A DNA stretch of 64,000 nt, taken from the IMG/VR virus record IMGVR_UViG_3300032242_002041, positions 164,287 to 228,286 of that record; one strand, given 5' to 3'. Every line of letters starts with the position of its first letter. Position 1 is the stretch's first letter. Positions 15,433-57,754 of the stretch are shown one piece after another. The notes below the pieces were generated by a model, which made no database searches, was not told the DNA's origin, and worked only from the letters and a program-made list of their open reading frames with translations. The translations under genes and the position numbers were made by a program.

Positions 15433-16604
15433 TTCTGGTGGCTTTCTATATTAGTATTATTAAACGAGTCAATGGCATCATACATATCTGGAAAAATTGC
15501 ACGACTATTTAATTTTCTATCTTGGTCTAATTTGTTAAATTCTTCTACTGTATATTCAAGTCCGTCCCAATTGGATTTATAGGGAGTTCGATCGTCGTTT
15601 AACGAGGCAATTACGTTGTCAATGCCAAGAATATTTGAATAATCATTTTTAGAAATTCGCTGTCTAACCAACTCTCTCTGGTGATCAGTTAGTCGTTGAA
15701 TTGCCCACGGACCACCATTATCTCTCAGATTGTAGATATTAATAGTTATTGCTCGATGAGATATATTCAAAGTTTGATGCACCAAATCAATAAAATCCCA
15801 AATTGACAACGAGTTAATATTCATAAACACCATGTTAAAACTAAGGTGATGCTTTGCAATCAAGTTAATTGTGTGTAAATTTTCTAAGAAAACATTCCAT
15901 TTTCCGGGCCAACGAATATATTCATATTGTTCTGCAATTGATTCTCCGCTAACTAACCATTGTACATTACTAAACTGTTTCAACAATTCAAAAATTTTAT
16001 TTTCGTGTATTAGGCTAAGATTAGTATTAACACAAATACGACAAGATTTATTAACTTCTAATAATTTTCTTAAGACTATTTCGTTTTCTTTTATCATCAA
16101 CGGCTCGCCACCAGCAAGATATATTTCTTTAAGGTCGGCAGCAGATTCTAAAACATAATCTAACAAATCTCCTTTGGCTTCTTTCATCTTAACTACTTGA
16201 TATTTCTGTTCGGCCCATAGTGAGCTGAGCTCAGGGTCACAATATATGCAGGCAAAATTGCAGGTATTGTTCCAACGCAAATCAAGATATTTTAAATTAA
16301 AGTTATCAATATTGTTGTAAAACTCATCACCAAGATGGTTATATTTCTTTTTAAAATGATGTTGTAAAGTATGAGTACCAATCTGAGAGTGGCAATTTTT
16401 ACACCCTTCAACCGGAATATCATTTAACATCATTGTTTTGATATCGAGATTATTAGAGCCGCTTATTGTGTCTTTGATTGCAGGAGTTTTATTAATATTA
16501 CCTAATTTATTTTTACTCACACAACAATTTTCTATATTGCCTTGGGGGTCAATATACAGTGAAACCCACGGCGCTGGACAGAAATGTTTATTATCTATGG
16601 TCAT
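15429..16604 (-). CDS. radical SAM protein with N-terminal SPASM/twitch-like Cys domain
   Basis: FCPAPW..CC..GCKNC, then CNFACIYC, AGGEP. Confidence 0.85.
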   Translation of the reverse strand: MTIDNKHFCPAPWVSLYIDPQGNIENCCVSKNKLGNINKTPAIKDTISGSNNLDIKTMMLNDIPVEGCKNCHSQIGTHTLQHHFKKKYNHLGDEFYNNIDNFNLKYLDLRWNNTCNFACIYCDPELSSLWAEQKYQVVKMKEAKGDLLDYVLESAADLKEIYLAGGEPLMIKENEIVLRKLLEVNKSCRICVNTNLSLIHENKIFELLKQFSNVQWLVSGESIAEQYEYIRWPGKWNVFLENLHTINLIAKHHLSFNMVFMNINSLSIWDFIDLVHQTLNISHRAITINIYNLRDNGGPWAIQRLTDHQRELVRQRISKNDYSNILGIDNVIASLNDDRTPYKSNWDGLEYTVEEFNKLDQDRKLNSRAIFPDMYDAIDSFNNTNIESHQK

Positions 16605-43468: not shown

Positions 43469-44179
43469 TTATTTAGTCGGGATTATCTGCATAGTTTTTC
43501 TTATAAGGCCAGGGCGAACTAAACCGAGCATGGTTAACCACAGCATTTCGTTGTGATCAACAAAAAAGTAATCTTGGGTCCTATTAAACGGCCCTACTAT
43601 CCATGCGTTGAGCGCAGGGCTTACCCTAACAGTCTGTTGATTTAATAAAAATCCCGTTAGATGAGTCTTTTGTTCCGCGGTCAATTTGACTATTTTAAAA
43701 TAACTACGAAATTGGTGTTGAGGGTTTTTTAGTTGTATAGTATTTGGAGGACGATTAATATCTGCTCGACTGTAACTGTTACTTTCTACTCCATTGAGTT
43801 GATCTACCCGATCAATTAAAGTTAAATCGTTGGTGTAAAGGTATCCTTGGTTGGCACTTACTACTAGTTTAAAATCTACAGGTGCAGTTAACAACAGCGT
43901 TGCCAAGGTGTGTAAGTTATCAACCGTTTGGTCGGTAATTTCTTTTCTTCGCTGTCCTAGTATATGTTGACGGCCTAATACTTGTCCGGTCTTGTGCCAT
44001 CGTTGCATGGCTATGCTACGCCACTCTCGGCGACGTTCAATCGTTCGATCAATTTCGTCATGACCAAGGTCGCGCAAAGCACTGGCTTCATCCATTGTGA
44101 AACTTAGCACGTATTCAAATCGATTATGAAACAATCGATCTTTGACAACCGATTTAAATTGTTGGATCGCTTTGGTCAA
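43469..44179 (-). CDS. hypothetical protein
   Basis: 236-aa ORF downstream of clpA. Confidence 0.7.
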   Translation of the reverse strand: MTKAIQQFKSVVKDRLFHNRFEYVLSFTMDEASALRDLGHDEIDRTIERRREWRSIAMQRWHKTGQVLGRQHILGQRRKEITDQTVDNLHTLATLLLTAPVDFKLVVSANQGYLYTNDLTLIDRVDQLNGVESNSYSRADINRPPNTIQLKNPQHQFRSYFKIVKLTAEQKTHLTGFLLNQQTVRVSPALNAWIVGPFNRTQDYFFVDHNEMLWLTMLGLVRPGLIRKTMQIIPTK

Positions 44180-46430
44180 GAACTATATATCCATTTTCAT
44201 CGACTACAGGAGCCAGCATAGGAGGCTCGATTATAAAATCAATTCGATCATCAACCATGATAGCTGAAATATTGCAGTTTTCTAATCGATCAAACAAGAT
44301 CTTCTTACTCAACGGCACACGAATTAACTCGTCAATCTTACGACCTAAGGGACGAGCACCCATCTTATTGTCATAGCCCTTATCGGCTAACATATCAATA
44401 ACAGATTCCGTTAAGTTTAGCTTAATGTTCTTGTTCATTAGGCTATCTTTAAGTTCATCTACAAATTTAACAACAACTTTCTTGATAGCCAAGGTATCTA
44501 ACTTGTTAAACTTGCACACACAGTCGATACGATTGCGTAGCTCAGGCTTGAAGAACTCTTTCATGGCTTTGTCTTCACTACCGGTCTTTTCTAATGCCTG
44601 ACCGAAGCCAATGTTGTTTGACTCGTTATCACGAGCACCCAAGTTTGATGTCATGATAATGATGCAGTTCTTAAGATCTACTGTTTTACCATTGCTCGAT
44701 GTAATACGAGCTTCGTCTAACATTTGTAACATAATGTTAACAACGTCGGGGTGAGCCTTTTCAATTTCGTCAAACAACAAGATACTAAATGGATTCTTAC
44801 TAACATCACTAATTAACTTGCCGCCGCCTAGGTTACCATCTTCAAAGCCTACGTAGCCTGGAGGCGCACCAATCAAGCCCGAAACTGTATGACGTTCTTG
44901 ATACTCACTCATATCGTATTTTAACAACTTCATATCTAAGTGTTCGCCTAGCAACTTGGCTAGTTCTGTTTTGCCTGTGCCTGTTGGTCCAAGGAATAAA
45001 AAGCTGGCAATAGGACGTTTGTTGTTGCCAATGCCGGAGAAATTAATGTAGACACGTTCTAAGACACGATCTACAGCCGCATCTTGTCCGTAGAGCTTTT
45101 GTTTGATGTTACTTTCCAGTTCAACAATCTTGGTTGAACGTTCGTTTTCAAGTCGATCTAAGGGAACATCAGTTACCCGACTTAGTTGTTCCATAATCAT
45201 TTCTTTGGTAATGGTTACATTGCCCAAGTCCTTGACACGTTCCTTAGCACAAGCACCGTCCAACAGATCAATTGACTTGTCTGGATTCTTACGATCATGA
45301 ATGTAACGGCCACTTAATTCAACTGCGGCTGTAATAGCATCAGTATCAATCATGACATTATGAAACTGTTCCAAACGTGGGCTAAGTCCAATAAGAATCT
45401 GTTCTGTTGTTTCTGCATTGGGCTCATCGATGCTCACACGATGGAAGCGACGCATTAAGGCGCGGTCTTTTTCAAACGACTCGTAGTATTCTTCCCAAGT
45501 AGTACTAGCAATTACTTTTAAACTGCCCTTGGTAATACTTGGCTTTAACATGTTGGCCATGTCCAAGCTACTTTGACTGCTGGCACCAGCACCTTTCATG
45601 GTATGCGCTTCATCAACAAACAAGATACAATTCTTTTTAGTTTCTAGAGCAGTAATAACTGCTTTGAACTTTTCTTCAAACTCACCGCGATACTTTGATC
45701 CAGCTAGTAATGAGCCCACTTCCAATGACCATAGTTCGTGTCCTTTAAGGAATTCTGGTACATGACCAGCGGTCATTTCCTGTGCTAGTCCTTCTACAAT
45801 AGCAGTCTTGCCTACACCGGGGTCGCCAACCATTAACACGTTGGCCTTGAACTTGCGAGCCAACACAGTAATCATTTCATCGAGCTCTGCACTACGGCCA
45901 ATCATGGGTTCAAGACGATCTTCACGGGCTAGCTTGGTAAGCTCAACACAGTGTTCTGTTAATATTTCTGTGGCCTGTTGATCCGTGAGCTTGACATCAC
46001 TTTGTTTGTAATGAGCGTTGTAAAATTCTACAAATTCAGTTTTCTTCATACCATACTTGAGTAGGAAGTAATGAGCGTGACTGTTGTTCTCAGCCATCAT
46101 GGCCAAGTATAAATCTACAGTACTAATAGTTCTGCGACCAGTAAACAAGACCTGAGTCAGTGCGCGATTAAACACACGTTCTAGAGCATTGGTTTTTTTA
46201 GGTTGCACATCTTTGTCAGTGACTAGTGCTGCCAAATTATTTAGATAGGTGTTTAATTCCATATCTAGCAAATTTACGTCAACACCAAATTTTTCCATGA
46301 CACGATGAAAAGGTTCGTGTCTAATTAGGCTCAATAGTACATGTTCAGTTAATACGTATTCGTGATGGCGATCACGTGCTAATTTAACTGCACCGTCAAC
46401 TATTTGTTCAATTTCTGGATTATTTTGCAT
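44154..46430 (-). CDS. clpA: ATP-dependent Clp protease ATP-binding subunit
   Basis: Clp N-domain, GDPGVGKT and GPTGTGKT Walker A motifs, no M-domain, IGF loop. Confidence 0.92.
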   Translation of the reverse strand: MQNNPEIEQIVDGAVKLARDRHHEYVLTEHVLLSLIRHEPFHRVMEKFGVDVNLLDMELNTYLNNLAALVTDKDVQPKKTNALERVFNRALTQVLFTGRRTISTVDLYLAMMAENNSHAHYFLLKYGMKKTEFVEFYNAHYKQSDVKLTDQQATEILTEHCVELTKLAREDRLEPMIGRSAELDEMITVLARKFKANVLMVGDPGVGKTAIVEGLAQEMTAGHVPEFLKGHELWSLEVGSLLAGSKYRGEFEEKFKAVITALETKKNCILFVDEAHTMKGAGASSQSSLDMANMLKPSITKGSLKVIASTTWEEYYESFEKDRALMRRFHRVSIDEPNAETTEQILIGLSPRLEQFHNVMIDTDAITAAVELSGRYIHDRKNPDKSIDLLDGACAKERVKDLGNVTITKEMIMEQLSRVTDVPLDRLENERSTKIVELESNIKQKLYGQDAAVDRVLERVYINFSGIGNNKRPIASFLFLGPTGTGKTELAKLLGEHLDMKLLKYDMSEYQERHTVSGLIGAPPGYVGFEDGNLGGGKLISDVSKNPFSILLFDEIEKAHPDVVNIMLQMLDEARITSSNGKTVDLKNCIIIMTSNLGARDNESNNIGFGQALEKTGSEDKAMKEFFKPELRNRIDCVCKFNKLDTLAIKKVVVKFVDELKDSLMNKNIKLNLTESVIDMLADKGYDNKMGARPLGRKIDELIRVPLSKKILFDRLENCNISAIMVDDRIDFIIEPPMLAPVVDENGYIVLDQSDPTI

Positions 46431-47700: not shown

Positions 47701-48330
47701 TTATAGTGCTGGGAATGATTGTGCAGGTCCCAAGGGTTTACCTGTGTTTGGGCAAGCTGGCGCTGGTGTCCCAAATGCAGGTGCTGGTGTGGAGCCAAAT
47801 GCAGGTGCTGGTGTGGAGCCAAATGCAGGTGCTGGCGCGGATCCATATGCTGGTGTTGCACTGCCGTAACCTCCTGTTGCAGGTGCGCCATATGCTGGTG
47901 CTCCGCCCATTGTTTGCGATCCATATCCATTATTAAATCCTCCACCCATATTGTTATTCATACCACCCATTGCACCGCCTGGAGGAACATACTGTGTACC
48001 TGCTCCTGGTCCAAATCCTTGACTTAATCCGCCATTCTCTGCTCCAGCCATTTTTTCTTTAGTACGGCCATATGCGGCAATACCTAATACAGCACCCATG
48101 GCAATATGGAAAAGTCCAGCACCTTGTAAGGTCAAGGGTTGCCATTGGCTATTAACTTGTCCGTGGTTAATTGCTTGATGTAGACTCCATAGTACCGGAA
48201 ACAACATAAAGTCGCAGGCACAGACAGCCATGTACATCCAACCCATCATTGGACGCCATTTGGCATTCATCCAATCTTCTTTTTTCTTTTCACTATCCGT
48301 AGAGTGATTGTATTCACTTAACTGTGACAT
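47701..48330 (-). CDS. putative holin (GTA 3TM-holin-like) with repetitive Gly/Pro tail
   Basis: WRPMMGWMY, TM helices, LGIAAYGRTKEK; in lysis cassette. Confidence 0.7.
   Translation of the reverse strand: MSQLSEYNHSTDSEKKKEDWMNAKWRPMMGWMYMAVCACDFMLFPVLWSLHQAINHGQVNSQWQPLTLQGAGLFHIAMGAVLGIAAYGRTKEKMAGAENGGLSQGFGPGAGTQYVPPGGAMGGMNNNMGGGFNNGYGSQTMGGAPAYGAPATGGYGSATPAYGSAPAPAFGSTPAPAFGSTPAPAFGTPAPACPNTGKPLGPAQSFPAL
47760..47860. repeat. 24-bp tandem repeat encoding (GSTPAPAF)n
   Basis: gcaggtgctggtgtggagccaaat repeated, with degenerate flanking copies. Confidence 0.85.
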
Positions 48331-48379
48331 ACCTGCTCCTTTTTATTATTATTATTATATTTACTACAAAACTACTTTA

Positions 48380-48664
48380 TTACTTTGCTTCGTCTACGTT
48401 TCCTGCGTGATAATTGGCCAATGCTTCCGCTTCTTTAGCGGCTTCAATTAAGGCGGCTGTTTCGGCCTGTGCTTTGGTTGCAGCGGCCAATGCAGCTAAA
48501 TGTGCGGCCTTGCTAAACTTGGCGGCACGCTGTTTGGCATCTGCCAAGGCACGTTCCGCGGCCGCAACATCATCAATTGCTTCTGTGGACAACTTTTTAG
48601 CATTGGTAAATGCTTCTTTTAACTTGCCCGCTACTGTTTGTTCTAATCGAGTAAACCAACCCAT
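48380..48664 (-). CDS. Ala-rich coiled-coil protein
   Basis: SD AAGGAG before ATG 48664. Confidence 0.65.
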   Translation of the reverse strand: MGWFTRLEQTVAGKLKEAFTNAKKLSTEAIDDVAAAERALADAKQRAAKFSKAAHLAALAAATKAQAETAALIEAAKEAEALANYHAGNVDEAK

Positions 48665-48674
48665 TTTATTCTCC

Positions 48675-48932
48675 TTAAACGGCTCCAGCAATCATAATTA
48701 GCCCGGTAATACAAGTGTTTAAAGTTTCTTTAAACGACAAGGCACTCATGTCATTTAGAATGGCCAATTGATTTTGAGCGTCCTTAAGGATTTCTGCTGT
48801 GTCTTGTGGCGACATTTGTCCTGCCTTGGCTTGTTCTACGATTTGATTTATTTGCGAGGCAAAATTAGCAAATGTTGGATCACCAGAGTTGGCGATATTA
48901 TAAAGTTGTTGTTGAATTTCATCTAGTGTCAT
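48675..48932 (-). CDS. hypothetical protein
   Basis: Operon ORF in the lysis region. Confidence 0.65.
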   Translation of the reverse strand: MTLDEIQQQLYNIANSGDPTFANFASQINQIVEQAKAGQMSPQDTAEILKDAQNQLAILNDMSALSFKETLNTCITGLIMIAGAV

Positions 48933-49327
48933 CTTGGTCTATTTCCTATAACGTGTTGTATTACTCGGGCACTGTTCTCAATACTTGTGTATTTTAACTT
49001 ACAGAACAAGGGAGGAACAGGAGGTGTATCATAACGTTTGGCTAACCCTTGCGCTATATCATTTAAACTTTTAGCGGCCTTATAACTATCTGTGTTATTA
49101 GGAATCTGCTCGCTGTAAACTTCATATAACTCTGTCTTGCGGGCTAATGCAACAGCATTTGGTTGTGCTACCAATGGATTGCTACAGCCATCTCGATAGT
49201 ATGCAGCATCTACACGAATCTCAGTTATAATACGATATTCATTGGAATCAAAGCTGGTCATCATTATAGCGTCATAAACAGCACAGCTTGACAACACAGG
49301 CAACAGTAGCAAGACTAATCTTTTCAT
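48929..49327 (-). CDS. lipoprotein
   Basis: Lipobox LSSC. Confidence 0.7.
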   Translation of the reverse strand: MKRLVLLLLPVLSSCAVYDAIMMTSFDSNEYRIITEIRVDAAYYRDGCSNPLVAQPNAVALARKTELYEVYSEQIPNNTDSYKAAKSLNDIAQGLAKRYDTPPVPPLFCKLKYTSIENSARVIQHVIGNRPR

Positions 49328-49596
49328 TGTGCGCCTTGGTAAATTTGCTTGTGTGTGTTATACCAATTTTGCCAGGCTTCATACCGGTCTTTAAGAATAT
49401 AGTATTTAGAAAAATTAGTGTTGGCGTTGTCAATTAGGTCGCTTAATTTGGTTTGGTCGGCGGCCAACGGGGTTAGGTCTTCGGCAGGTTCCATTAGTTC
49501 GGCGGGTGCATCGGGCCATTTAATATTGATCGGTGCAACTTTGGTGGCACATCCAACTAGACCAACAAGCATTACAGCAATAAGTAATCGTTTCAT
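49324..49596 (-). CDS. o-spanin (Rz1-like lipoprotein)
   Basis: Lipobox LVGC, Pro-rich, follows i-spanin. Confidence 0.75.
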   Translation of the reverse strand: MKRLLIAVMLVGLVGCATKVAPINIKWPDAPAELMEPAEDLTPLAADQTKLSDLIDNANTNFSKYYILKDRYEAWQNWYNTHKQIYQGAQ

Positions 49597-50066
49597 TTTG
49601 TTGGTCCTAATATCTTACTACCGGAGTTTTTTACGGCACGGTTATAGTCTTCCCATGCGTCACTATTGATCTTATTGCAATCAGCATTGATCTTGTCTCG
49701 GTCTTTCTGAATAATAACACTTACTCCATAAGCACGACCTTTAACTAAGTGTGCATTGGCATCAAGTGCTTGACTTAATTGTTGATTAGCTGCCTTGGCC
49801 TGTTCGTCAGCAATGTCTGCCTTGTGTTGTGCTTCTATAACATCGGCTTTGTACACGGCAATCACACCGGCACCACCATACATAAACACACCGGTCAGCA
49901 TGGCAATAAACGCCACAGGTTTGATAAACTTGGCATACAGGCTAAACTGTGGCAAATGACTGATAACACCAGCAAAGAACCAGATCACAAAAGCACCACC
50001 GGCCAGAGCAGGCCATAGCCAGTCTGGAATGTTGCCTAAGGCGTAGTGGACAAATAATTCAAACAT
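49593..50066 (-). CDS. i-spanin (Rz-like)
   Basis: N-terminal TM helices plus coiled coil with C-terminal Cys, after endolysin. Confidence 0.7.
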   Translation of the reverse strand: MFELFVHYALGNIPDWLWPALAGGAFVIWFFAGVISHLPQFSLYAKFIKPVAFIAMLTGVFMYGGAGVIAVYKADVIEAQHKADIADEQAKAANQQLSQALDANAHLVKGRAYGVSVIIQKDRDKINADCNKINSDAWEDYNRAVKNSGSKILGPTK

Positions 50067-50677
50067 TATGAACTAAACACCTGCATGGCCTGCAGGTAAC
50101 GATGCTGACGATCATCTAATCCCAAGGTGCCGCCATTGATCTTCTTGGTCATGGTAACAAAGTCTCCCGAGTCAGCATAAGAATTTAAGTTGTTGTTTTC
50201 CCAGAACCAGCAGGCACTTTGAACAGCACCTTCAAATGTTTGTAGGAACGCAGGAACATCATTGATCGCCATACCAACTGAATCAGCAAACGCTTGATAG
50301 TTTACACGCCCTGTAACTTGTAACAAGCCTCGGCCGCAAAAGTTCCAACCGTCGCCTGACGCTTCATCGCCATTGCCCATACGGCCAGCATAGGCACGGT
50401 TGGCAATACGTTCTGGATTGTGAGCGTATTGCTCGGCGATATCTGGAGTAAAGTGGCTAGGCCAGACCCGACAAAGACTGGCCGCTTGATAGTTTAAGTT
50501 TTCATGTAAGGCAGAATAACCACCCGACTCGTGTGCTGTTTGTGCTAAGAATGCCGCCACACGCTGTGGTGTAGTGATATCATAATCTGGTAGTATTTTG
50601 TTCAAGGCTTCGCACCAATGGTCAACATAAGGGTTGCCCGGTAGGATTTGTGCTAATTGATCTTGTCTGATTTCCAT
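50066..50677 (-). CDS. glycoside hydrolase family 19 endolysin
   Basis: AAFLAQTAHESG, ENLNY, GRGLLQVTGR.NY, TKKINGG. Confidence 0.92.
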   Translation of the reverse strand: MEIRQDQLAQILPGNPYVDHWCEALNKILPDYDITTPQRVAAFLAQTAHESGGYSALHENLNYQAASLCRVWPSHFTPDIAEQYAHNPERIANRAYAGRMGNGDEASGDGWNFCGRGLLQVTGRVNYQAFADSVGMAINDVPAFLQTFEGAVQSACWFWENNNLNSYADSGDFVTMTKKINGGTLGLDDRQHRYLQAMQVFSS

Positions 50678-50719
50678 GGTATTGTGCTCCGTTGATACCA
50701 ATATTTAGCTGATCAAGTG

Positions 50720-51379
50720 TTACAAACTATAAGGGCTCCGACTTCTTAATATACGCAGAAAATCTCTAGTTTTGTCTGTAACTACACCGGTCATCTGTAG
50801 TGTAATCCTGGGGCCATGTCCTGCGTTGGCAGTTGAGTGTGGAATGTTTTGCCAGTCAAAAGTGTGAACATCACCGGCACGCCATCCTGTATGGAGATAG
50901 TTGCCGTAGCTAAAGAAATGTCCTGGTTCATAGTCGTTGAGCGCAATCATAACTCGCATGACTTTGGAAGGGTCTTCTGGATTCCACTTTTCTAGTTTGT
51001 CTAAATGTAAGTTCCAAACTTGTCCTGGTTGTTGAACGTGCAAGCGCATTTTACAGTTGTCCATGCCAAACCATACAGCAATTTTGTTAAATGTTTCCGG
51101 AACGTCCCAGGATAGGTCACCAACAATATGATCTTTGCCGTAGCCAAACTGCTCAAGATCGTAATCCTCTTGATCGTATTCTTCTGCAGGACGGTCAGCA
51201 CCCCGGCCACGAGTACGCCATGTTTTAGGCTTTGCCAGCTCTACAATAGTTGCTAGCTCATCTTGCCAAAATGGCGAAATATTACCTAGGCTAGTAACAC
51301 AGTCTTGATCTGGATCAAATCTAAAATTATCAAAATGATACGTACTACGCTGTTTAGTTAATTCCCAACTTCCGTTCAT
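50720..51379 (-). CDS. 2OG-Fe(II) oxygenase / Asp-Asn beta-hydroxylase-like cupin
   Basis: HLD...PHSTANAG..PRITLQ (HxD..H..R). Confidence 0.7.
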   Translation of the reverse strand: MNGSWELTKQRSTYHFDNFRFDPDQDCVTSLGNISPFWQDELATIVELAKPKTWRTRGRGADRPAEEYDQEDYDLEQFGYGKDHIVGDLSWDVPETFNKIAVWFGMDNCKMRLHVQQPGQVWNLHLDKLEKWNPEDPSKVMRVMIALNDYEPGHFFSYGNYLHTGWRAGDVHTFDWQNIPHSTANAGHGPRITLQMTGVVTDKTRDFLRILRSRSPYSL

Positions 51380-51993
51380 ATTACTTTGACTCCTAAGTCT
51401 GATTTGTTGTAATTCTGCTTATACTCGTCTGGTGCAGGTTGAATACCCAATATGTGTGCTAGAGCAAAATTATCAGTGGGCATCATACCTGTGTATTTGT
51501 CCCATGCCAGTTGAATATCTCTGTTTTGATCAGCTATAATTCCTGCCATGGTTCGTAAATCTTTATAATACTTAGTATAGCTAGGATAGGTAATGTTGAA
51601 ATGCCCGCACTTGACCCACCAACCCAAACATGCATCATCGCCGCGGTGTGCTAAGATAATAGGAGCATCTGGCCAGGTATGACGCAAGAAGTCAATGTTG
51701 TGAGCAAAAATATGGCTCTTGATAATACGCACACCTTCACCACTAAACGGTTCATCAAACCGCCGTTCTAATTCTGCTTTGCTCAAAGTGCTAAGATCTG
51801 CCGGTAAGTCAAATTCCATGCCTGGATCAAAGTACGCACCTAGATGCATGAGCTCAAGTTGTCCAGGAGCATCGTGCCAGTATGTGCGCTCTTCTGAGTA
51901 GTCACTACGATCAACACTGGAACTATAGTAAATATTTTTAATTAAACTTGACCACTTGCTACCAGGAGCGGCTGCACAAAATATATATTTCAT
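51376..51993 (-). CDS. sulfotransferase-fold/P-loop-like protein
   Basis: N-terminal APGSKWS loop, IIKSH, IILAHR. Confidence 0.5.
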   Translation of the reverse strand: MKYIFCAAAPGSKWSSLIKNIYYSSSVDRSDYSEERTYWHDAPGQLELMHLGAYFDPGMEFDLPADLSTLSKAELERRFDEPFSGEGVRIIKSHIFAHNIDFLRHTWPDAPIILAHRGDDACLGWWVKCGHFNITYPSYTKYYKDLRTMAGIIADQNRDIQLAWDKYTGMMPTDNFALAHILGIQPAPDEYKQNYNKSDLGVKVI

Positions 51994-52970
51994 TAATTGG
52001 TTCCTTCTGCGCTGATGTACTTTTGCATAGGCAAGAAGGTGGCACGTAGATCTTCTATCTGCTGATTTAATCCCTTGGGAGTAAGTTCACGCTCTTCAAC
52101 AAAGACCAAATTTTGGTCGCACCACTCTCGATATTCTTTAGTTTTCATTGCGGCGCTAAATGTTCGTTGATACCAAGCAACAATGTCTTTAGGAGTTTTA
52201 GGCGGAAGTGCTATTGCCCATCCGGCATAAACATTAATACCTGGAGCAATTGTGCTTAAGAATGGAACATTGGGATATTGTGCTAACTTACGATCGCCGG
52301 TGAATCCAATGATTTTTACTTTACCAGCATCAGCTAAAGGATGAGCTACAGCAATAGGCATTATTCCAAATTCTGTGCCACCGGCATCCAGACTGGCCAC
52401 ACTGGTAACTGCTTGCAATGGACCTTGGAACTTGATAAACTTGACCTGATCACGCTTGCCATTGCCTTTGACCATCAAGTATTCATAAGCCATGCGATGT
52501 GCGCCCCCGCCAATGGCCACGTTAATAGGTCGATCTGTGGTAGAAATTAATCGCACAAAATCTATAGGAGTGTTTACCCGGCTGTTGGGCCAGGCTACCA
52601 ATACCAACGGACTCTTGCCCATGGTCAATACGTATTCAAATGAATTGTAATCAAATTTTTTAACTTTCTTTTCCCAAATATCATTAGTAACAAACGTACT
52701 CATATGGCTAGGAATACCTGCGGTGTAACCGTCGGGAGCAGCATCGTACACATAATTCATGCCTACCACTGAGTCAGCACCGGGTTTATTTTCAATAACA
52801 AATTTAACCTTGCTCATTTTCTTTTCTGAAATGATGCTGGCTAACTTACGAAAAGCAATTTCATTTCCTGCTCCAGGAGCATTACCTATAACAACAATTA
52901 CAGGTTTTGTGGGTTCCCAGGCAAATGCCAGTGTGGGTATTAATAATAGTATTGCTAACAAACGTTTCAT
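51993..52970 (-). CDS. tripartite tricarboxylate transporter substrate-binding protein (Bug/TctC)
   Basis: Signal peptide, APGAG, IENKPGA, APDGYT, PPKTPKDIV. Confidence 0.85.
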   Translation of the reverse strand: MKRLLAILLLIPTLAFAWEPTKPVIVVIGNAPGAGNEIAFRKLASIISEKKMSKVKFVIENKPGADSVVGMNYVYDAAPDGYTAGIPSHMSTFVTNDIWEKKVKKFDYNSFEYVLTMGKSPLVLVAWPNSRVNTPIDFVRLISTTDRPINVAIGGGAHRMAYEYLMVKGNGKRDQVKFIKFQGPLQAVTSVASLDAGGTEFGIMPIAVAHPLADAGKVKIIGFTGDRKLAQYPNVPFLSTIAPGINVYAGWAIALPPKTPKDIVAWYQRTFSAAMKTKEYREWCDQNLVFVEERELTPKGLNQQIEDLRATFLPMQKYISAEGTN

Positions 52971-52971
52971 T

Positions 52972-53523
52972 TTAGTCCTTGAATAATAAATTTTTAATTT
53001 CGTCGGGTATCCAGGGTTCCTTCATGCGCTCTGGATGCCATACTACTCCTGCTATGTTGGCATCAATCCAGGCTTCGATGTTTCCTTCTGGGTCTGTTGC
53101 CAATGGTGTTGCTTGTTTGGGCAATCGTGTAATTGCTAGGCCATGGTAACTGTTTACCTGATGTTGATCTCCGAAATACATAATGGTATGTTCTGTATTA
53201 TGATGCCCAATAACATCTTCAACTTCGCCACCTAATACTTCTGCTAATAAAAATGCACCATGACAAACACCAACTACGGGTTTTCGTCTAAGTGTCATCT
53301 GTCCCGCTAATTTTAATTCTATTGTGCGGCGGAGAGCTGAATCGTCACCACCTGTGATAATCACGGCGTCTAAATCTACTGCTAACTGCTCAAAATCTTG
53401 ATCGGTTCTATTTGCAATAGGAACAAGCGTATGGCCCTTAAGGTATGAATACCAGGAGTGGGAGCTAGAGTCATACGCCTGTCCGTTATGATATAGGATT
53501 CGTTGTGTTAATCCTATCTTCAA
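52972..53523 (-). CDS. class I glutamine amidotransferase (peptidase C26-like)
   Basis: TGGDD, GVCHG, VNSYH, WHPE triad. Confidence 0.88.
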   Translation of the reverse strand: MKIGLTQRILYHNGQAYDSSSHSWYSYLKGHTLVPIANRTDQDFEQLAVDLDAVIITGGDDSALRRTIELKLAGQMTLRRKPVVGVCHGAFLLAEVLGGEVEDVIGHHNTEHTIMYFGDQHQVNSYHGLAITRLPKQATPLATDPEGNIEAWIDANIAGVVWHPERMKEPWIPDEIKNLLFKD

Positions 53524-53524
53524 A

Positions 53525-54220
53525 TTACCAACCGTATGCGTCTGCTACTAGCTCTCGTCCAGCTTCGGCCGCTACAGTGTTCTTGCATGAAATTTCATAC
53601 AAGTCTTTACGCATAGCGGCAACCAAAGTTTCAACTCGAGCAGCAACTTCTGCGTCTGTAACTAACTGCTCTAACTTACGAGCACCAATCTTGGCATGGA
53701 AACCTTCGTCCTTGGCAATCTTGGCATAACTCTTACGAATAAATTCGTCCTCAACACACTCAGCCATTGTGTTCCAAACAGCTTCAGCACGACCTTCAGC
53801 AACTAGTTGATAAGCAGCAAGAGCAACTGGATCATTTTCTGCTTCGTACTTAGCAAGTAGGCCAGCACCTTTGGCAGTTGGTTTAGCAGCTTCACGGGCA
53901 ATAGCGGCTTCAACATCAACTGGTGCTCCTGTGATATGTTCAATAACATCTTTAACCATACGGAAATGAACGGCTTCATCATGGGCTTGCTGAGTTAGTA
54001 GCTGGAGTTCTACTGGATCAGCATCTGCTGGCATTTGTGCAATAGCTTGGCTGATTTCAACCATGTTCATGCGCTCATTGACCATACGGCCAATGAAGTG
54101 CTCTACTAGCTCTTCTTGAGCTGGCTTGCTGTCAAAGTAAGCCCGAACATTGTGTTGGCTTGCTTGAAATAGGGCTTGGTTGTCTGCTACAATCTTGGCA
54201 ACAAATTGTTTACTGTTCAT
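53525..54220 (-). CDS. ferritin-like diiron protein
   Basis: E...DEAVH and E...DEGFH paired ExxH motifs. Confidence 0.75.
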   Translation of the reverse strand: MNSKQFVAKIVADNQALFQASQHNVRAYFDSKPAQEELVEHFIGRMVNERMNMVEISQAIAQMPADADPVELQLLTQQAHDEAVHFRMVKDVIEHITGAPVDVEAAIAREAAKPTAKGAGLLAKYEAENDPVALAAYQLVAEGRAEAVWNTMAECVEDEFIRKSYAKIAKDEGFHAKIGARKLEQLVTDAEVAARVETLVAAMRKDLYEISCKNTVAAEAGRELVADAYGW

Positions 54221-54312
54221 AAAATCTCCTTAAATAGTTATCATGAAATTACAAGAGGCATAAAATTTTTTATCTCTTTGTAAAATTATTTACCTGAAAC
54301 GGAAATTTTTTA

Positions 54313-55041
54313 ATGAATACCAAAATTTATAAGCTAATACAGAAAAATTTGTATGATACCTTTAATTTGCCCAAGTACAAAGATGTTATTGTCACACCCG
54401 ATACTCGAGTAGATGAGTTGCCTTGGACTCCTGCACGTTATCGCAAGTTTAAAGACGCAGTAGAAACAGAGTTAATGTTAGAGGATTGTGACTTTAATGG
54501 CCCGCTACTTAAAATTGTAGACACTATCAGCGAACGCTACATTCTACGTTTTTTTGGAGAAATTTGGAAACCCAGAACTGATGACTATAATCACACTGGC
54601 TGGAGCCTGGTTGAAGAAATTAACAAACTTGACCCTAAAAATGTATTAGATGTAGGTTGTGGATACCACCCATTTAAAGGGCGCATTCAAAACCTAATAG
54701 GTATTGATCCATACAATGCGGCCGCTGATTATCAAGTTGACATTTTAGAATATCGGGTTAAACACAAGCACGATGTTATTATTGCTCTTGGATCAATTAA
54801 CTTTAATAGTCAAGATGAAATTGAAGCTAGATTTGGGCATTGTGTAGATTTACTTGAAACCGGTGGCCGCTTCTATCTACGTGCCAACCCAGGAATTGCA
54901 CACAAGGCAGGACCATATGTAGAAATATTTCCTTGGACGTTTGAAATAGTAAACGAGTTTGCTGAACGATATAATCTTAAATTGTTAGAGTTTAAAAAGG
55001 ATGCTAACAATCGTTTATATTTTGTTTACGAAAAACTTTAA
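54313..55041 (+). CDS. class I SAM methyltransferase with ACP-like N-terminal domain
   Basis: VLDVGCG, IGIDP, LGSINF; divergent from the ferritin operon; TAAATA at 54231. Confidence 0.75.
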   Translation: MNTKIYKLIQKNLYDTFNLPKYKDVIVTPDTRVDELPWTPARYRKFKDAVETELMLEDCDFNGPLLKIVDTISERYILRFFGEIWKPRTDDYNHTGWSLVEEINKLDPKNVLDVGCGYHPFKGRIQNLIGIDPYNAAADYQVDILEYRVKHKHDVIIALGSINFNSQDEIEARFGHCVDLLETGGRFYLRANPGIAHKAGPYVEIFPWTFEIVNEFAERYNLKLLEFKKDANNRLYFVYEKL

Positions 55042-55690
55042 TCATTAATTCGCCAGCGGCTTGATGTGCTGCTTCTAATGGGTGCCAGCTAGCAGTTTCG
55101 GGGTGCCCATTTTTACGACTCCAGTCTAAAAAATTTAATCCATCGAACTTGGTCATACGAGTTTTTACATAGTCTTGTAGATCCATAATTGCTGGGGTGG
55201 TATGCCACTGTTGATCAAATAGTAACTCATCCATATAGGTCATAACAAACGGAATATTTCTTTGATCAAGAGTATCTATAGCTAATTTTATATAACTTAA
55301 ACAGGTAAATTTATCTCGATACTCAGAATGTAAATCGCGATAGTAGACTTTTGCTATTTCTGTATTGTCTACGGGCATGATAGTTGACCAGTCTTGCCAG
55401 ACTGTTCCAATTTGTTTAGTATTATAATAATCAAACCGATCAATCCAGGTCCAGCTAATAACAAATAAATCAGAGTTATTGCTAGTAGACGCCTGATTTA
55501 ATACTTTTTCTAAAATTTGTAAATTGCCACTACCGGGTCTGGCAAAACATTCATATTGATAATTAAGATTTTTAGCTAAAATTGCTGGCCAGGTTTGTTG
55601 GCTTGGTACAATTGGGCCGCCTGGAACTATAACAGCATCGTTTAGATCACTGCCAAAGATAAATGAACAACCGAAACTTTTTAGAATCAT
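55004..55690 (-). CDS. SGNH/GDSL hydrolase-like protein
   Basis: FGCSFIFG, PGSGN, HPLEAAH. Confidence 0.65.
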   Translation of the reverse strand: MILKSFGCSFIFGSDLNDAVIVPGGPIVPSQQTWPAILAKNLNYQYECFARPGSGNLQILEKVLNQASTSNNSDLFVISWTWIDRFDYYNTKQIGTVWQDWSTIMPVDNTEIAKVYYRDLHSEYRDKFTCLSYIKLAIDTLDQRNIPFVMTYMDELLFDQQWHTTPAIMDLQDYVKTRMTKFDGLNFLDWSRKNGHPETASWHPLEAAHQAAGELMIKVFRKQNINDC

Positions 55691-57016: not shown

Positions 57017-57754
57017 ATGAGTAGACAAAAAGCAGTTAGTAAACAACAAAAACGTCAAATGACATACCAAGAAAACACCATAAGATTTGATCAAGCAAAA
57101 CCACAAAAGCAAAGGCCCATTGATATCGTGCCACGTTCACGCAATCAAGAACGCCTTGTATTAGCTTTACAAAGTGCTGATCAGCATATTGTGGTCACAG
57201 CAGGGCCAGCAGGAACAGGAAAGACATATTTGGCCATGCTAGCAGCAGTCAAGGCTTTTAGAGCTGGAGAAGTAGATCGCATAGTATTAACGCGACCAGC
57301 AGTAGGAGTGGAAGATGAAAAGCATGGGTTCCTACCCGGTGATTTAAATCAAAAAATGGATCCGTGGGTTCGCCCATTGACCGATATACTTAGAGAGTAC
57401 TATCGTCAGCCCGACATCCAGGCCATGATAGAGGAGCAAACTATAGAGATTGCCCCGCTCGCTTTCATGCGAGGTCGTACTTTCAAAAGTGCATATATTA
57501 TAGCTGATGAGATGCAGAACGCAACTCCTAGTCAGGTAAAAATGCTGATGACCCGTATCGGCGAAGGCTCAAAAATCGTAATCACGGGCGATGTAGAACA
57601 GGCGGATCGCAACCGCGGCAACAACGGGTTAATGGACCTATGCCAAAGATTGCAGGAAGGAGGTGTAAAGGGAATAGCTGTTTGTCATTTGGACAACCGA
57701 GACATACAGCGGCATGCTATCATTGATAGTGTGCTTACGCTTTACGCTGACTGA
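57017..57754 (+). CDS. phoH: PhoH-like ATPase
   Basis: GPAGTGKT, GFLPG, FMRGRT, DEMQN, TRIG, GD.EQ.D. Confidence 0.95.
   Translation: MSRQKAVSKQQKRQMTYQENTIRFDQAKPQKQRPIDIVPRSRNQERLVLALQSADQHIVVTAGPAGTGKTYLAMLAAVKAFRAGEVDRIVLTRPAVGVEDEKHGFLPGDLNQKMDPWVRPLTDILREYYRQPDIQAMIEEQTIEIAPLAFMRGRTFKSAYIIADEMQNATPSQVKMLMTRIGEGSKIVITGDVEQADRNRGNNGLMDLCQRLQEGGVKGIAVCHLDNRDIQRHAIIDSVLTLYAD

What the first reader, a model, noticed from the sequence alone, without database searches (positions are those of the whole stretch)
50720..55690. Compact biosynthetic-like operon with its own periplasmic binding protein
Seen: ferritin-like diiron protein, class I GATase, Bug/TctC solute-binding protein, sulfotransferase-like protein and 2OG oxygenase in one coupled run leading into the lysis genes. 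A methyltransferase is divergent, with back-to-back TAAATA motifs (54231 plus, 54287 minus), and an SGNH-like gene converges on it. No TctA/B. Inference: a phage pathway that makes or modifies a small carboxylate metabolite and binds it in the periplasm, perhaps a signal linked to lysis, or tailoring of a virion glycan. I know no described system with this set.
Basis: inference. Interest (0 to 1): 0.78.

Follow-up and report, generated by a model that had tools for sequence, protein, structure and literature searches.

The report
Shuffled tailoring-enzyme island of freshwater jumbo phages
A giant freshwater phage carries a conserved but constantly reshuffled set of small-molecule tailoring enzymes plus its own exported carboxylate-binding protein; the set recurs in hundreds of uncultured phages and a few bacteria, and its product is unknown.

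Summary
Window 50720-55690 encodes five tightly packed minus-strand genes: a diiron helical protein, a C26-type class I glutamine amidotransferase, an exported TctC/Bug binding protein, a sulfotransferase-like protein and a cupin with a 2OG-oxygenase motif. A SAM methyltransferase-like gene is divergent and an SGNH-like gene converges on it. The window is the end of a 228-kb jumbo-phage record. Its DNA polymerase is nearest to those of Sinorhizobium phage Phosso and Agrobacterium phage Atu_ph07.

The genes co-occur elsewhere. Of 52 related phage loci with full flanks, 50 have the methyltransferase, 49 the amidotransferase, 48 the sulfotransferase-like gene, 33 the oxygenase and 21 TctC, in 28 different gene orders. 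Relatives add a further P-loop protein and an APS-kinase/nucleotidyltransferase fusion. Rare bacterial islands (Janthinobacterium, Massilia, Tahibacter) link the diiron protein to sulfotransferases, a sulfatase-family protein and the methyltransferase.

Neither this record nor three near-complete relatives encode TctA. Adjacency to the lysis genes is not conserved, and no glycosyltransferase lies in the island.

Best reading (moderate confidence): a PAPS-dependent pathway that oxidises, sulfates and methylates a small amino-acid-like carboxylate, with TctC feeding the host TctAB importer. The substrate is unknown and no described system has this set.

The parts
53525..54220 (-). ferr231: 231-aa all-helical diiron protein. 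A new family with no Pfam model. The fold is closest to heme-oxygenase-like diiron enzymes (CADD, PqqC, TenA, UndA).
52972..53523 (-). gat183: 183-aa class I glutamine amidotransferase / peptidase C26-type amidohydrolase with an intact Cys-His-Glu triad.
   Evidence: Peptidase_C26 E 3.9e-15 and GATase E 3.4e-14. The best NCBIfam hit, for this protein and for two distant family members, is gamma-glutamyl-CDP-amidate hydrolase at 56-84 bits, below the cut-off of 250. C87, H163 and E165 are conserved. It lies within about 7 kb of ferr (usually adjacent) in 49 of 52 loci and in divergent contigs.
51993..52970 (-). tctC325: exported TctC/Bug-family solute-binding protein (tripartite tricarboxylate transporter receptor). 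It is an orphan: no TctA was found in this record or in the relatives searched.
   Evidence: PF03401 at 84.8 bits. Signal peptide MKRLLAILLLIPTLAFA|WEP. The best solved relatives by sequence are the terephthalate-binding protein, Bug27 and a TTT substrate-binding protein, 7ndr. No TctA. Two paralogs lie elsewhere in the genome.
51376..51993 (-). sulfo205: 205-aa sulfotransferase-like P-loop protein.
   Evidence: Sulfotransfer_3 E 0.0019. 8 of 23 family members hit only that family, best E 1.2e-5. P10-G-S-K-W-S15, K92-S93-H94 and R117 are conserved. Atlas neighbours are sulfotransferase clusters. In relatives it is clustered with an APS-kinase fusion.
50720..51379 (-). ogox219: 219-aa cupin/DSBH protein with a 2OG/Fe(II)-oxygenase motif.
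   Evidence: H125-x-D127, H181 and R191 are invariant in 23 sequences. The Atlas links it to Asp_Arg_Hydrox clusters. The model (pLDDT 66) matches cupins and proline 4- and 3-hydroxylases, PHD2 and AspH. There is no Pfam hit.
54313..55041 (+). mt242: divergent class I SAM-methyltransferase-like protein. It stands at the head of the module in nearly all relatives.
   Evidence: Weak CmoB hits. A 36%-identical paralog hits Methyltransf_23. V111-L-D-x-G-C-G117 is conserved in 41 sequences. It is present in 50 of 52 loci and in the Janthinobacterium and Tahibacter islands.
55004..55690 (-). sgnh228: SGNH/GDSL-like hydrolase or acyltransferase, convergent with mt242 (38-nt overlap of the 3' ends).
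   Evidence: hhalign probability 96.8%, E 2.7e-10, to the phage family that hits Lipase_GDSL_2. G7-C8-S9, G55-N56 and H203 are conserved.
54221..54312 (-). Leader of the module: a promoter-like GGTAAATAAT element about 72 nt upstream of ferr231, followed directly by a hairpin, then the TATTTAAGGAG ribosome-binding context.
   Evidence: Sequence. The element is present in 28 of 34 distinct intergenic regions of relatives, at about -70 to -80 where the gap is 90-100 nt. A hairpin with different stem sequences but conserved ACAA/UUGU ends folds in 10 of 11 sequences tested. TAAATA is strongly enriched upstream of genes genome-wide.

Best explanation
The seven genes are this phage's copy of a mobile, modular 'tailoring island' that marks a large lineage of freshwater jumbo phages. 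It has two sub-modules, headed by a divergent methyltransferase gene.

Sub-module A is the diiron oxidase/oxygenase ferr231 with the C26-type amidotransferase/gamma-glutamyl amidohydrolase gat183.

Sub-module B is the sulfotransferase-like sulfo205 with the 2OG-type hydroxylase ogox219. Relatives add one to three further P-loop proteins and an APS-kinase/nucleotidyltransferase fusion that would make the PAPS donor.

Proposed mechanism; every step is inferred:
1. The exported TctC325 captures a small carboxylate in the periplasm, most likely an amino-acid-like or aromatic acid, and hands it to the host's own TctAB membrane components.
2. In the cytoplasm the compound is oxidised or hydroxylated by ferr231 and ogox219.
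3. An amide or gamma-glutamyl group is processed, or ammonia is supplied, by gat183.
4. A hydroxyl is O-sulfated by sulfo205. The PAPS comes from the host in this phage and from the phage's own kinase in relatives.
5. The compound is methylated by mt242, and perhaps acylated or deacylated by sgnh228.

Shown: the family or fold of each protein, intact catalytic motifs, export of TctC only, recurrent co-occurrence, and absence of TctA.

Inferred: that the genes act on one substrate, the nature of that substrate, the direction of transport, and the use of PAPS.
For: (1) Co-occurrence despite shuffling. 341 IMG/VR contigs encode a ferr relative. In the 52 loci with at least 5 kb on both sides, mt242 occurs in 50, gat in 49, sulfo in 48, ploop215 in 38, ogox in 33, TctC in 21 and the APS-kinase fusion in 20, in 28 distinct orders. 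TctC sits in at least 5 different positions inside the cluster.

(2) Divergent contexts keep the pairings:
- L018: [SGGLDS-motif protein] > TctC > ferr > ferr > GAT.
- L021: 2OG oxygenases, a P-loop protein, three ferr copies, an SGNH-like protein and GAT.
- L023: GAT > ferr.

(3) Independent bacterial support:
- In Janthinobacterium and Massilia, ferr (70% identity) lies with ploop215 (62-65%), a sulfo205-like protein and a Sulfatase-family protein; an mt242-like protein was found only in Janthinobacterium.
- In Tahibacter, ferr (45% identity) lies with a sulfo205-like and an mt242-like protein.
- In Tahibacter a bona fide Sulfotransfer_3 protein (123.6 bits) also sits directly downstream of ferr.

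(4) Sulfation context. The APS_kinase domain (E 1e-11) is fused to an NMNAT-like nucleotidyltransferase in relatives, and it is present in all 3 near-complete relatives.

(5) Small-molecule character.
- ferr's fold neighbours (CADD, PqqC, TenA, HrmI, UndA, ADO, MiaE) are mostly small-molecule enzymes.
- ogox's largest structural overlaps are with free-amino-acid proline hydroxylases.
- TctC ligands in solved relatives are carboxylates.
- An Atlas cluster of bacterial proteins fuses Asp_Arg_Hydrox and Sulfotransfer_3 domains.

(6) Recurrent theme. The other two TctC paralogs of this genome also sit among an mt242 paralog, P-loop proteins, an SGNH-like protein, a 2OG oxygenase and radical-SAM enzymes.

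(7) Only TctC has a signal peptide. No TctA is found in the phages.
Against: - No substrate or product is identified, and nothing was measured.
- All phage loci belong to one lineage with shared flanks (PhoH, clamp loader, virion protein). Part of the co-occurrence is therefore inheritance, and the site may simply be a plastic accessory island.
- TctC is absent from 31 of the 52 loci and from the bacterial islands. ferr+gat are absent from 9 of the 13 loci fetched through TctC. The parts can therefore work without each other.
- The sulfotransferase assignment of sulfo205 is weak (below Pfam's cut-off). The P-loop families are not detectably related to each other by hhalign.
- This phage's 228 kb holds no APS kinase.
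- The ogox219 model is only of middling quality (pLDDT 66).
- Tight gene packing is the genome's norm.
- The host is unknown, so the presence of a host TctAB is assumed.
Confidence: 0.42

Rival explanations
1. Unlinked auxiliary genes in a plastic island. TctC is a stand-alone nutrient-uptake booster, as PstS is in cyanophages, that raises carboxylate import through host TctAB for energy or 2-oxoglutarate supply. The enzymes beside it serve other, mutually unrelated purposes and are neighbours only because this site tolerates insertions.
For: - TctC is optional, present in 21 of 52 loci.
- ferr+gat and tctC+sulfo+ogox occur without each other.
- The site lies between conserved core genes and varies greatly in content.
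- Tight packing is the genome's norm.
- The bacterial islands lack TctC, gat and ogox.
Against: - The same families stay together at 92-96% frequency through 28 rearrangements.
- They re-associate in divergent phages and in three bacterial genomes.
- TctC is inserted inside the cluster at 5 or more positions rather than at its edge.
- The two other TctC paralogs again sit next to paralogs of the same enzyme families.
Confidence: 0.2
2. Macromolecule tailoring. The sulfotransferase-like, hydroxylase, methyltransferase and SGNH proteins decorate a protein, peptide or envelope glycan or lipid: a virion component, a ribosomal peptide, or the host surface to block superinfection. The TctC protein is unrelated, or is itself a target.
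For: - The Asp/Arg-hydroxylase-like Atlas neighbours and the AspH/prolyl-hydroxylase structural hits include protein hydroxylases.
- The genome is rich in radical-SAM/SPASM and B12-radical-SAM enzymes, which are typical of peptide modification.
- SGNH and methyltransferase enzymes are common glycan decorators (own knowledge).
Against: - No glycosyltransferase lies in or near the island. GT2 genes were found in 2 of 3 near-complete relatives, about 55-70 kb away.
- No precursor-peptide candidate was identified.
- All the enzymes lack signal peptides.
- ferr's fold neighbours and the C26 enzyme point to small molecules.
Confidence: 0.15
3. A phosphoramidate-type (MeOPN-like) donor pathway. gat183 acts like Cj1417 (gamma-glutamyl-CDP-amidate hydrolase). 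The APS-kinase-like/nucleotidyltransferase fusion of relatives acts like Cj1415/Cj1416. Together they make a PAPS-like 3'-phospho-nucleoside diphosphoramidate. The sulfotransferase-fold proteins transfer from it, and mt242 methylates the result.
For: - The best NCBIfam hit of three divergent gat family members is always NF045546 (Cj1417 family), at near-full length and 7-30 bits above the next family.
- An APS-kinase homolog, a nucleotidyltransferase and a methyltransferase co-cluster with it.
- In C. jejuni, Cj1415-Cj1418 make CDP-phosphoramidate 3'-phosphate from glutamine, ATP and CTP (PMC11800397).
- A plain sulfation pathway gives the amidotransferase no role.
Against: - The defining L-glutamine kinase (PPDK_N domain) is absent from this record and from 4 relatives, 3 of them near-complete.
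- The gat scores are far below the family's cut-off of 250.
- The nucleotidyltransferase is NMNAT-like, not a sugar-nucleotidyltransferase type.
- The bacterial islands pair ferr with a bona fide sulfotransferase and a sulfatase-family protein and have no gat.
- ferr has no role in that pathway.
Confidence: 0.08
4. The phage makes a small carboxylate and its own TctC binds that product in the periplasm, as a signal coupled to lysis or as a sequestering or retrieval device.
For: - TctC is embedded in an enzyme cluster.
- In this window the cluster runs straight into the endolysin and spanin genes.
- Some Bug/TctC proteins signal through sensor kinases (own knowledge).
Against: - No exporter lies in the island.
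- Adjacency to the lysis genes is not conserved.
- The TAAATA element is not specific to late genes; it also precedes the DNA polymerase and PhoH genes.
- The family's known role is uptake.
Confidence: 0.1

Closest known systems
Cyanophage-encoded PstS: a phage-borne periplasmic binding protein that works with the host's transporter (own knowledge)
   Same: A phage encodes only the exported solute receptor and relies on the host's membrane components. The gene is an accessory gene present in part of the lineage.
   Different: PstS belongs to an ABC system and binds phosphate, and it stands alone. Here the receptor is a TTT/Bug-family carboxylate binder, occurs in 2-3 paralogs per genome, and sits inside enzyme clusters. 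tblastn of this TctC against 50,697 GenBank phage records gave a single hit, 24% identical, in a human-fecal phage record.
Orphan Bug/TctC proteins of Betaproteobacteria: BugD, BugE, Bug27, TphC/TBP (solved structures; the adipate binder AdpC from own knowledge)
   Same: Family membership by sequence, a signal peptide, and orphan status without an adjacent tctAB.
   Different: It is encoded by a virus. Identity to the solved members was not computed; the matches score only 33-56 bits. The ligand is unknown.
Heme-oxygenase-like diiron enzymes: CADD/CT610 4-aminobenzoate synthase, PqqC, UndA, HrmI, BesC, PolF
Campylobacter jejuni O-methyl phosphoramidate pathway (Cj1415-Cj1418 plus methyltransferases)
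   Same: A C26-type hydrolase most similar to Cj1417, an APS-kinase homolog, a nucleotidyltransferase and a methyltransferase lie in one cluster.
   Different: There is no glutamine kinase. Scores are far below the equivalog cut-off. Extra diiron, 2OG-oxygenase, sulfotransferase-fold and TctC genes are present.
Dedicated PAPS supply plus sulfotransferase sets: NodPQ/NodH of Sinorhizobium, RaxPQ/RaxST of Xanthomonas (own knowledge)
   Same: In relatives a private APS kinase is clustered with sulfotransferase-like genes.
   Different: The set is phage-borne. The adenylyltransferase part is a small NMNAT-like domain, not CysDN or Sat. The acceptor is unknown. The kinase is missing from this phage's 228 kb.

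Membership tests
TctC/Bug solute-binding proteins (PF03401) | Sequence match above the curated cut-off over most of the domain | tested here: met
   84.8 bits against a cut-off of 27, profile positions 3-242 of 274. 11 solved TTT binding proteins match at E 3.6e-14 to 2.4e-7.
TctC/Bug solute-binding proteins (PF03401) | Export to the periplasm (N-terminal signal peptide) | tested here: met
   MKRLLAILLLIPTLAFA|WEP, read from the translation. The hydrophobic N-terminus is conserved in orthologs and paralogs. No signal-peptide predictor was run.
TctC/Bug solute-binding proteins (PF03401) | Works with TctA/TctB membrane components | not testable with these tools
   No TctA in this record or in 5 relatives. 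The host is unknown. The candidate host genera Janthinobacterium and Massilia each have at least one TctC homolog. TctB was not searched.
TctC/Bug solute-binding proteins (PF03401) | Binds a carboxylate ligand | not testable with these tools
   Loops PGAGNE, PGADSV and GGGAHR are conserved in orthologs, at places where I recall the family's carboxylate-binding loops. That is from memory; no ligand assay was possible.
Class I glutamine amidotransferase / peptidase C26 | Cys-His-Glu catalytic triad in a GxCxG elbow and an HxE motif | tested here: met
   G85-x-C87-H88-G89 and H163-P164-E165 are at least 90% conserved in 41 sequences. Pfam PF07722 and PF00117 both score above their cut-offs.
Gamma-glutamyl-CDP-amidate hydrolase (Cj1417, NF045546) and the MeOPN pathway | Equivalog-level score | tested here: not met
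   63.6 bits (56-84 bits in relatives) against a cut-off of 250.
Gamma-glutamyl-CDP-amidate hydrolase (Cj1417, NF045546) and the MeOPN pathway | L-glutamine kinase partner (PPDK_N-type, Cj1418) | tested here: not met
   PF01326 is absent from G000-G004, of which three are 95-100% complete.
PAPS-dependent sulfotransferases (Sulfotransfer_3 clan) | Sequence match to a sulfotransferase family | tested here: inconclusive
   18.9 bits against a cut-off of 27 for sulfo205. 8 of 23 family members hit PF13469 and nothing else, best E 1.2e-5. There are no PDB profile hits. The Atlas feature and structure neighbours are sulfotransferase clusters, TM 0.63-0.66.
PAPS-dependent sulfotransferases (Sulfotransfer_3 clan) | 5'-phosphosulfate-binding loop and a 3'-phosphate motif | tested here: inconclusive
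   An N-terminal strand followed by P10-G-S-K-W-S15 is invariant, and R89/K92-S93-H94 are conserved. These resemble the PKxGTTW loop and the RxxxS motif as I recall them. Their spacing was not checked against a structure.
Fe(II)/2-oxoglutarate oxygenases (DSBH fold) | HxD/E...H facial triad plus a basic residue for the 2OG C5 carboxylate | tested here: met
   H125, D127, H181 and R191 are invariant in 23 sequences of 29-50% identity.
Fe(II)/2-oxoglutarate oxygenases (DSBH fold) | Double-stranded beta-helix fold | tested here: inconclusive
   The model has pLDDT 66. Foldseek hits are all cupins/DSBH, with 2OG hydroxylases giving the longest overlaps (TMq 0.43-0.48, E 2e-4 to 1e-3). There is no Pfam hit for any of 23 members.
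Heme-oxygenase-like diiron oxidases (PF14518-type) versus ferritin-like diiron proteins | Fold | tested here: met
Heme-oxygenase-like diiron oxidases (PF14518-type) versus ferritin-like diiron proteins | Metal ligand set | tested here: inconclusive
   The conserved set is E49, E82, H85, E142, E172 and H175. That is the ferritin-like E/ExxH/E/ExxH pattern. The three-histidine set I recall for the heme-oxygenase-like group is not seen. Metal content cannot be tested here.
SGNH/GDSL hydrolases | Blocks I, III and V (Ser, Gly-Asn, His) | tested here: met
   G7-C8-S9, G55-N56 and H203 are conserved in 15 sequences. hhalign probability is 96.8% to a family that hits Lipase_GDSL_2. sgnh228 itself has no direct Pfam hit.
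Class I SAM-dependent methyltransferases | Motif I (VLDxGxG) and a downstream acidic residue | tested here: met
   V111-L-D-x-G-C-G117 and D132 are conserved in 41 sequences. A paralog (36% identity) hits PF13489 above its cut-off.

The most novel reading that the evidence does not exclude
Freshwater jumbo phages carry a self-contained pathway that turns an imported or host amino-acid-like carboxylate into a sulfated, hydroxylated and methylated metabolite. The chemistry would rest on a new diiron enzyme family working with a glutamine amidotransferase. The pathway comes with its own family of periplasmic receptors. That would be a virus-made small molecule, whether signal, antimetabolite or protectant, with a cognate binding protein.
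Probability: 0.15. Interest if true: 0.85.

Novelty: new variant of a known kind. Interest (0 to 1): 0.66.

Why it matters
Phage auxiliary genes are mostly known as single genes that boost a host pathway. This is a multi-enzyme module with several unusual features.
- It is widespread: 341 viral contigs, and 2,528 homologs of its diiron protein.
- It is kept together through dozens of rearrangements.
- It carries a diiron protein family with no Pfam model.
- It has a private sulfate-activation step.
- In many variants it includes an exported carboxylate receptor of a family for which I found essentially no counterpart in GenBank phage records.

If it makes or transforms a defined metabolite, it would add sulfation chemistry and TTT-type uptake to what viruses are known to do to host metabolism in lakes. 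It would also give a handle on the function of a new diiron enzyme family.

The rare copies in Janthinobacterium and Massilia offer culturable systems, and a host lead for an uncultured phage lineage.

Tried and rejected
- DNA-level searches of the region against GenBank phages found nothing useful.
- Protein searches of TctC, ferr, ogox and sulfo against 50,697 phage records gave at most weak partial hits.
- Sequence and profile searches of ferr, sulfo and ogox against PDB sequences gave only weak hits (ferritin-like motif matches for ferr) or none.
- The search for homologous proteins for ferr returned only near-identical phage copies, so it did not reach distant relatives.
- The MeOPN-pathway idea was tested and weakened by the absence of a glutamine kinase.
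- The idea that TAAATA marks late genes, and so ties the module to lysis, was dropped because the motif also precedes the DNA polymerase and PhoH genes.
- hhalign did not link the several P-loop families to each other or to the APS kinase. I therefore do not claim they are all sulfotransferases.
Single-sequence folds show the hairpin.
- Distant cellular ferr homologs (25-30% identity) lie in unrelated small-molecule contexts without GATase and gave no function.
- The metatranscriptome lay-down showed contigs of relatives over the ferr gene only. The runs were found with that gene, so this does not rank expression or show co-transcription.
- Literature searches found tctA, but not tctC, reported as a viral auxiliary gene, and found nothing on phage sulfotransferase/APS-kinase clusters.
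- The first alignment-based viral scan failed because no stretch was conserved enough. It worked with a narrower alignment.

Full report
**Where the window lies.** The window is the last 64 kb of a 228,286-bp IMG/VR virus record, which CheckV estimates to be 66% complete. It encodes a family-B DNA polymerase, a clamp loader, PhoH, a Lon-like protease and a GH19 endolysin with spanins. The polymerase is 50% identical to that of Sinorhizobium phage Phosso. It is 46% identical to that of Agrobacterium phage Atu_ph07 and about 42% to the GAP32/CBB-type jumbo myoviruses. Sequencing runs that hold the DNA are freshwater and lake metagenomes. Related contigs reach 342-525 kb at 95-100% completeness.

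**The observation.** On the minus strand lie ferr231 (54220..53525), gat183 (53523..52972), tctC325 (52970..51993), sulfo205 (51993..51376) and ogox219 (51379..50720). Gaps or overlaps between them are 1-4 nt. The endolysin follows 18 nt later. mt242 (54313..55041, plus strand) is divergent. sgnh228 (55690..55004, minus strand) converges on it. Tight packing is not special here: 55% of same-strand neighbours in this genome lie 5 nt apart or less.

**What each protein is.**

- **tctC325** is a clear TctC/Bug protein. PF03401 scores 84.8 bits and 11 solved relatives match. It has a signal peptide.
- **gat183** is a class I GATase of the peptidase C26 type. Cys87, His163 and Glu165 are conserved. 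Its best NCBIfam neighbour is the Cj1417 family, far below the cut-off.
- **ferr231** has no Pfam, PHROG or NCBIfam hit.
  - E49, E82xxH85, E142 and E172xxH175 are conserved.
  - The model has pLDDT 94.5.
  - The nearest named Atlas cluster is PF14518/TENA at TM 0.73.
  - It is therefore a diiron helical enzyme between the heme-oxygenase-like and ferritin-like groups, and it represents a new family. Only 90 representatives were found among 1.84 billion proteins.
- **sulfo205** is sulfotransferase-like on weak but consistent evidence.
- **ogox219** has an invariant HxD...H...R motif and a cupin/DSBH model. Proline hydroxylases, PHD2 and AspH are its longest structural overlaps.
- **mt242** carries SAM motif I, and a paralog hits a methyltransferase family.
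- **sgnh228** is related to a GDSL-hitting phage family and keeps Ser, Gly-Asn and His.

**Do the genes co-occur?** Yes. Thirteen loci fetched through TctC all keep tctC > sulfo, with ogox after sulfo, directly or (L006/L007) after one inserted P-loop gene. mt242 lies divergently upstream in 12 of the 13; L004 begins inside ferr. Only four of them have ferr+gat.

A scan with a ferr alignment found 341 viral contigs, and 79 loci were tabulated. Among the 52 loci with at least 5 kb on both sides the counts are:

| Gene | Loci of 52 |
|---|---|
| mt242 | 50 |
| gat | 49 |
| sulfo | 48 |
| further P-loop protein (ploop215) | 38 |
| ogox | 33 |
| TctC | 21 |
| APS-kinase fusion | 20 |

These occur in 28 distinct gene orders. 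TctC is found between gat and sulfo, between ferr and gat, between sulfo and ferr, and after the kinase.

More divergent contigs keep the pairings. L018 reads [SGGLDS-motif protein] > TctC > ferr > ferr > GAT. L021 has three ferr copies with GAT, 2OG oxygenases, a P-loop protein and an SGNH-like protein. L023 reads GAT > ferr.

The set is real, and it splits into ferr+gat and sulfo+ogox(+TctC, P-loop proteins, kinase) behind a common divergent methyltransferase.

**The sulfation context.** In relatives the island holds a protein with an APS_kinase domain (E 1e-11). It is often fused to an NMNAT-like HxGH nucleotidyltransferase. All three near-complete relatives have it. This phage's 228 kb does not. 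Its closest relative, L025 (94% ferr identity), has the kinase between ogox and the lysis genes.

**Bacterial counterparts.** A scan of one genome per prokaryote species found ferr homologs in three isolate genomes. Janthinobacterium sp. UMAB-56 and Massilia atriviolacea SOD carry 70%-identical copies, and Tahibacter aquaticus a 45%-identical one. The neighbours of ferr differ by genome:

| Genome | Module relatives near ferr | Other neighbours |
|---|---|---|
| Janthinobacterium sp. UMAB-56 | ploop215 (62%), sulfo205-like (40%), mt242-like (36%) | Sulfatase-family protein, 2H phosphoesterase |
| Massilia atriviolacea SOD | ploop215 (65%), sulfo205-like (38%, at the edge of the fetched stretch) | Sulfatase-like and 2H-like proteins (read from sequence similarity to the Janthinobacterium ones, not scanned), cupin, glutamine cyclotransferase/5'-nucleotidase protein |
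| Tahibacter aquaticus | sulfo205-like (35%), mt242-like (41%) | Bona fide Sulfotransfer_3 protein (123.6 bits) directly downstream of ferr, radical-SAM enzyme, metallophosphatase, ADI-fold protein |

There is no gat, TctC or ogox in these islands.

In Janthinobacterium the island has GC 0.48-0.56 against 0.60-0.68 in its flanks; in Massilia and Tahibacter the dip is weaker and local. Only 1 of 201 genomes sampled from Massilia's family has ferr. The bacterial copies thus look like sporadic acquisitions, probably from phages. They point to Oxalobacteraceae as candidate hosts. They also give evidence, independent of the phage lineage, that ferr works with sulfotransferase-type proteins and the methyltransferase.

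**TctC.** The record has three TctC genes, and each near-complete relative has two. None of them has TctA. The other two paralogs of this genome lie at 140.7 and 151.7 kb. Their neighbours are an mt242 paralog, P-loop proteins, an SGNH-like protein, a 2OG oxygenase, two B12-radical-SAM and two radical-SAM(/SPASM) enzymes, and members of a 400-aa family with an SGGxDS-like motif. Orphan Bug proteins that share a few TctAB units are normal in Betaproteobacteria (own knowledge). Absence of tctAB is therefore no anomaly. It means the phage protein must use host components.

**Mechanism.** I commit, at moderate confidence, to an import-and-tailor pathway.

1. TctC delivers a small carboxylate through host TctAB.
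2. ferr231 and ogox219 oxidise or hydroxylate it.
3. gat183 handles an amide or gamma-glutamyl group, or supplies ammonia.
4. sulfo205 sulfates a hydroxyl from PAPS.
5. mt242 methylates.

The grounds are the recurrent clustering and the small-molecule character of the fold neighbours of ferr and ogox. Further grounds are the known uptake role of the TctC family and the private PAPS supply in relatives. None of the chemistry is shown.

The rivals are:

- unlinked accessory genes in a plastic site;
- tailoring of a protein, peptide or envelope polymer;
- a MeOPN-like phosphoramidate donor pathway, which is attractive because it gives gat, kinase, nucleotidyltransferase, methyltransferase and PAPS-fold transferases one logic, but which lacks the glutamine kinase (pathway as summarised in PMC11800397);

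The link to lysis is not conserved. No glycosyltransferase lies near the island.

**Regulatory detail.** The intergenic region 54221-54312 carries GGTAAATAAT about 72 nt upstream of ferr231. The same element stands in 28 of 34 distinct intergenic regions of relatives, at about -70 to -80 where the gap is 90-100 nt. A hairpin follows directly; its stem sequence varies while its ACAA/UUGU ends stay.

TAAATA is under-represented in the genome yet lies within 100 nt upstream of 55 of 230 genes. It also precedes the DNA polymerase and PhoH genes. It is therefore a general promoter-like element and not a late-gene mark. The second TAAATA, facing mt242, overlaps ferr231's TATTTAAGGAG leader.

**Novelty.** None of ferr, TctC, sulfo or ogox has a real homolog among 50,697 GenBank phage records. 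The literature held here reports tctA but not tctC as a viral auxiliary gene, and nothing on such clusters. The components belong to known superfamilies, so I rate the set a new variant of a known kind (a phage auxiliary gene cluster). It contains a new diiron family and, as far as I could find, a first phage-borne TTT receptor family.

**Limits.**

- One phage lineage supplies nearly all loci.
- ORFs in relatives were called mechanically.
- The ogox model is of middling quality.
- The host is unknown.
- No expression data of value could be obtained.

Noticed in passing
outside the window: G000:C1:136000-155000 (locus L017): A second enzyme island in the same phage. It holds two more exported TctC paralogs, two B12-binding radical-SAM enzymes, two radical-SAM enzymes (one of them SPASM-like), a paralog of mt242, a 2OG oxygenase, a metallophosphatase, an SGNH-like protein and two members of a 400-aa family with an SGGxDS-like motif.
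   Followed up: partly
window 54221-54312 (minus strand): A conserved promoter-like (A/G)TAAATAAT element followed directly by a hairpin. The inner stem varies among relatives while the ends stay ACAA/UUGU, and in many relatives a U-run follows. It may be a 5'-terminal stabiliser or an attenuator.
   Followed up: partly
whole genome G000: TAAATA is under-represented overall: 146 sites on both strands against about 257 expected. Yet 55 of 230 genes have it in sense within 100 nt upstream, which suggests a phage-specific promoter core like T4's TATAAATA.
   Followed up: partly
L004:4175-4969, L007:8901-9704 and other relatives: An APS-kinase domain is fused to a small NMNAT-like HxGH nucleotidyltransferase. 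The domain order is that of a PAPS synthase, but the transferase part is only about 110 aa. Beside it in some loci lies an 81-aa membrane protein.
   Followed up: partly
L110 (Janthinobacterium sp. UMAB-56), L111 (Massilia atriviolacea SOD), L113 (Tahibacter aquaticus): Bacterial islands hold 45-70%-identical ferr with ploop215, sulfotransferases, a sulfatase-family protein, a 2H phosphoesterase, a cupin, a radical-SAM enzyme and an ADI-fold protein. GC is lower than in the flanks. ferr was found in 1 of 201 genomes of Massilia's family.
   Followed up: partly
L018, L019, L020, L021: ferr occurs as two or three tandem paralogs in some phages, 40-60% identical to each other, which hints at hetero-oligomers or substrate diversification.
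   Followed up: no
window 53525-54220 compared with its neighbours: ferr is far more conserved among relatives (81-94% amino-acid identity; 120 database clusters at 87% or more) than the adjacent genes (46-66%). Contigs about 80-85% identical to it are present in two lake metatranscriptome runs.
   Followed up: partly
window 47701-50701: A lysis cassette directly downstream: a GH19 endolysin (50066-50701), a 157-aa membrane protein (spanin-like), two small lipoproteins (90 and 132 aa, with LVGC and LSSC lipoboxes) and a 209-aa glycine-rich membrane protein.
   Followed up: no
window 15429-16604, 44154-46430, 57017-57754: Another radical-SAM protein, a Lon-like ATP-dependent protease (phrog_4871, E 2e-234) and a PhoH-like protein.
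   Followed up: no
L109 (contig filed under a Nitrosopumilaceae MAG), L112 (contig filed under a Rhodobacteraceae MAG): Low-GC contigs (0.34-0.38) carrying ploop215 > ferr > gat or ferr > gat > ploop215 are filed inside cellular MAGs. They look like phage contigs binned by mistake.
   Followed up: no
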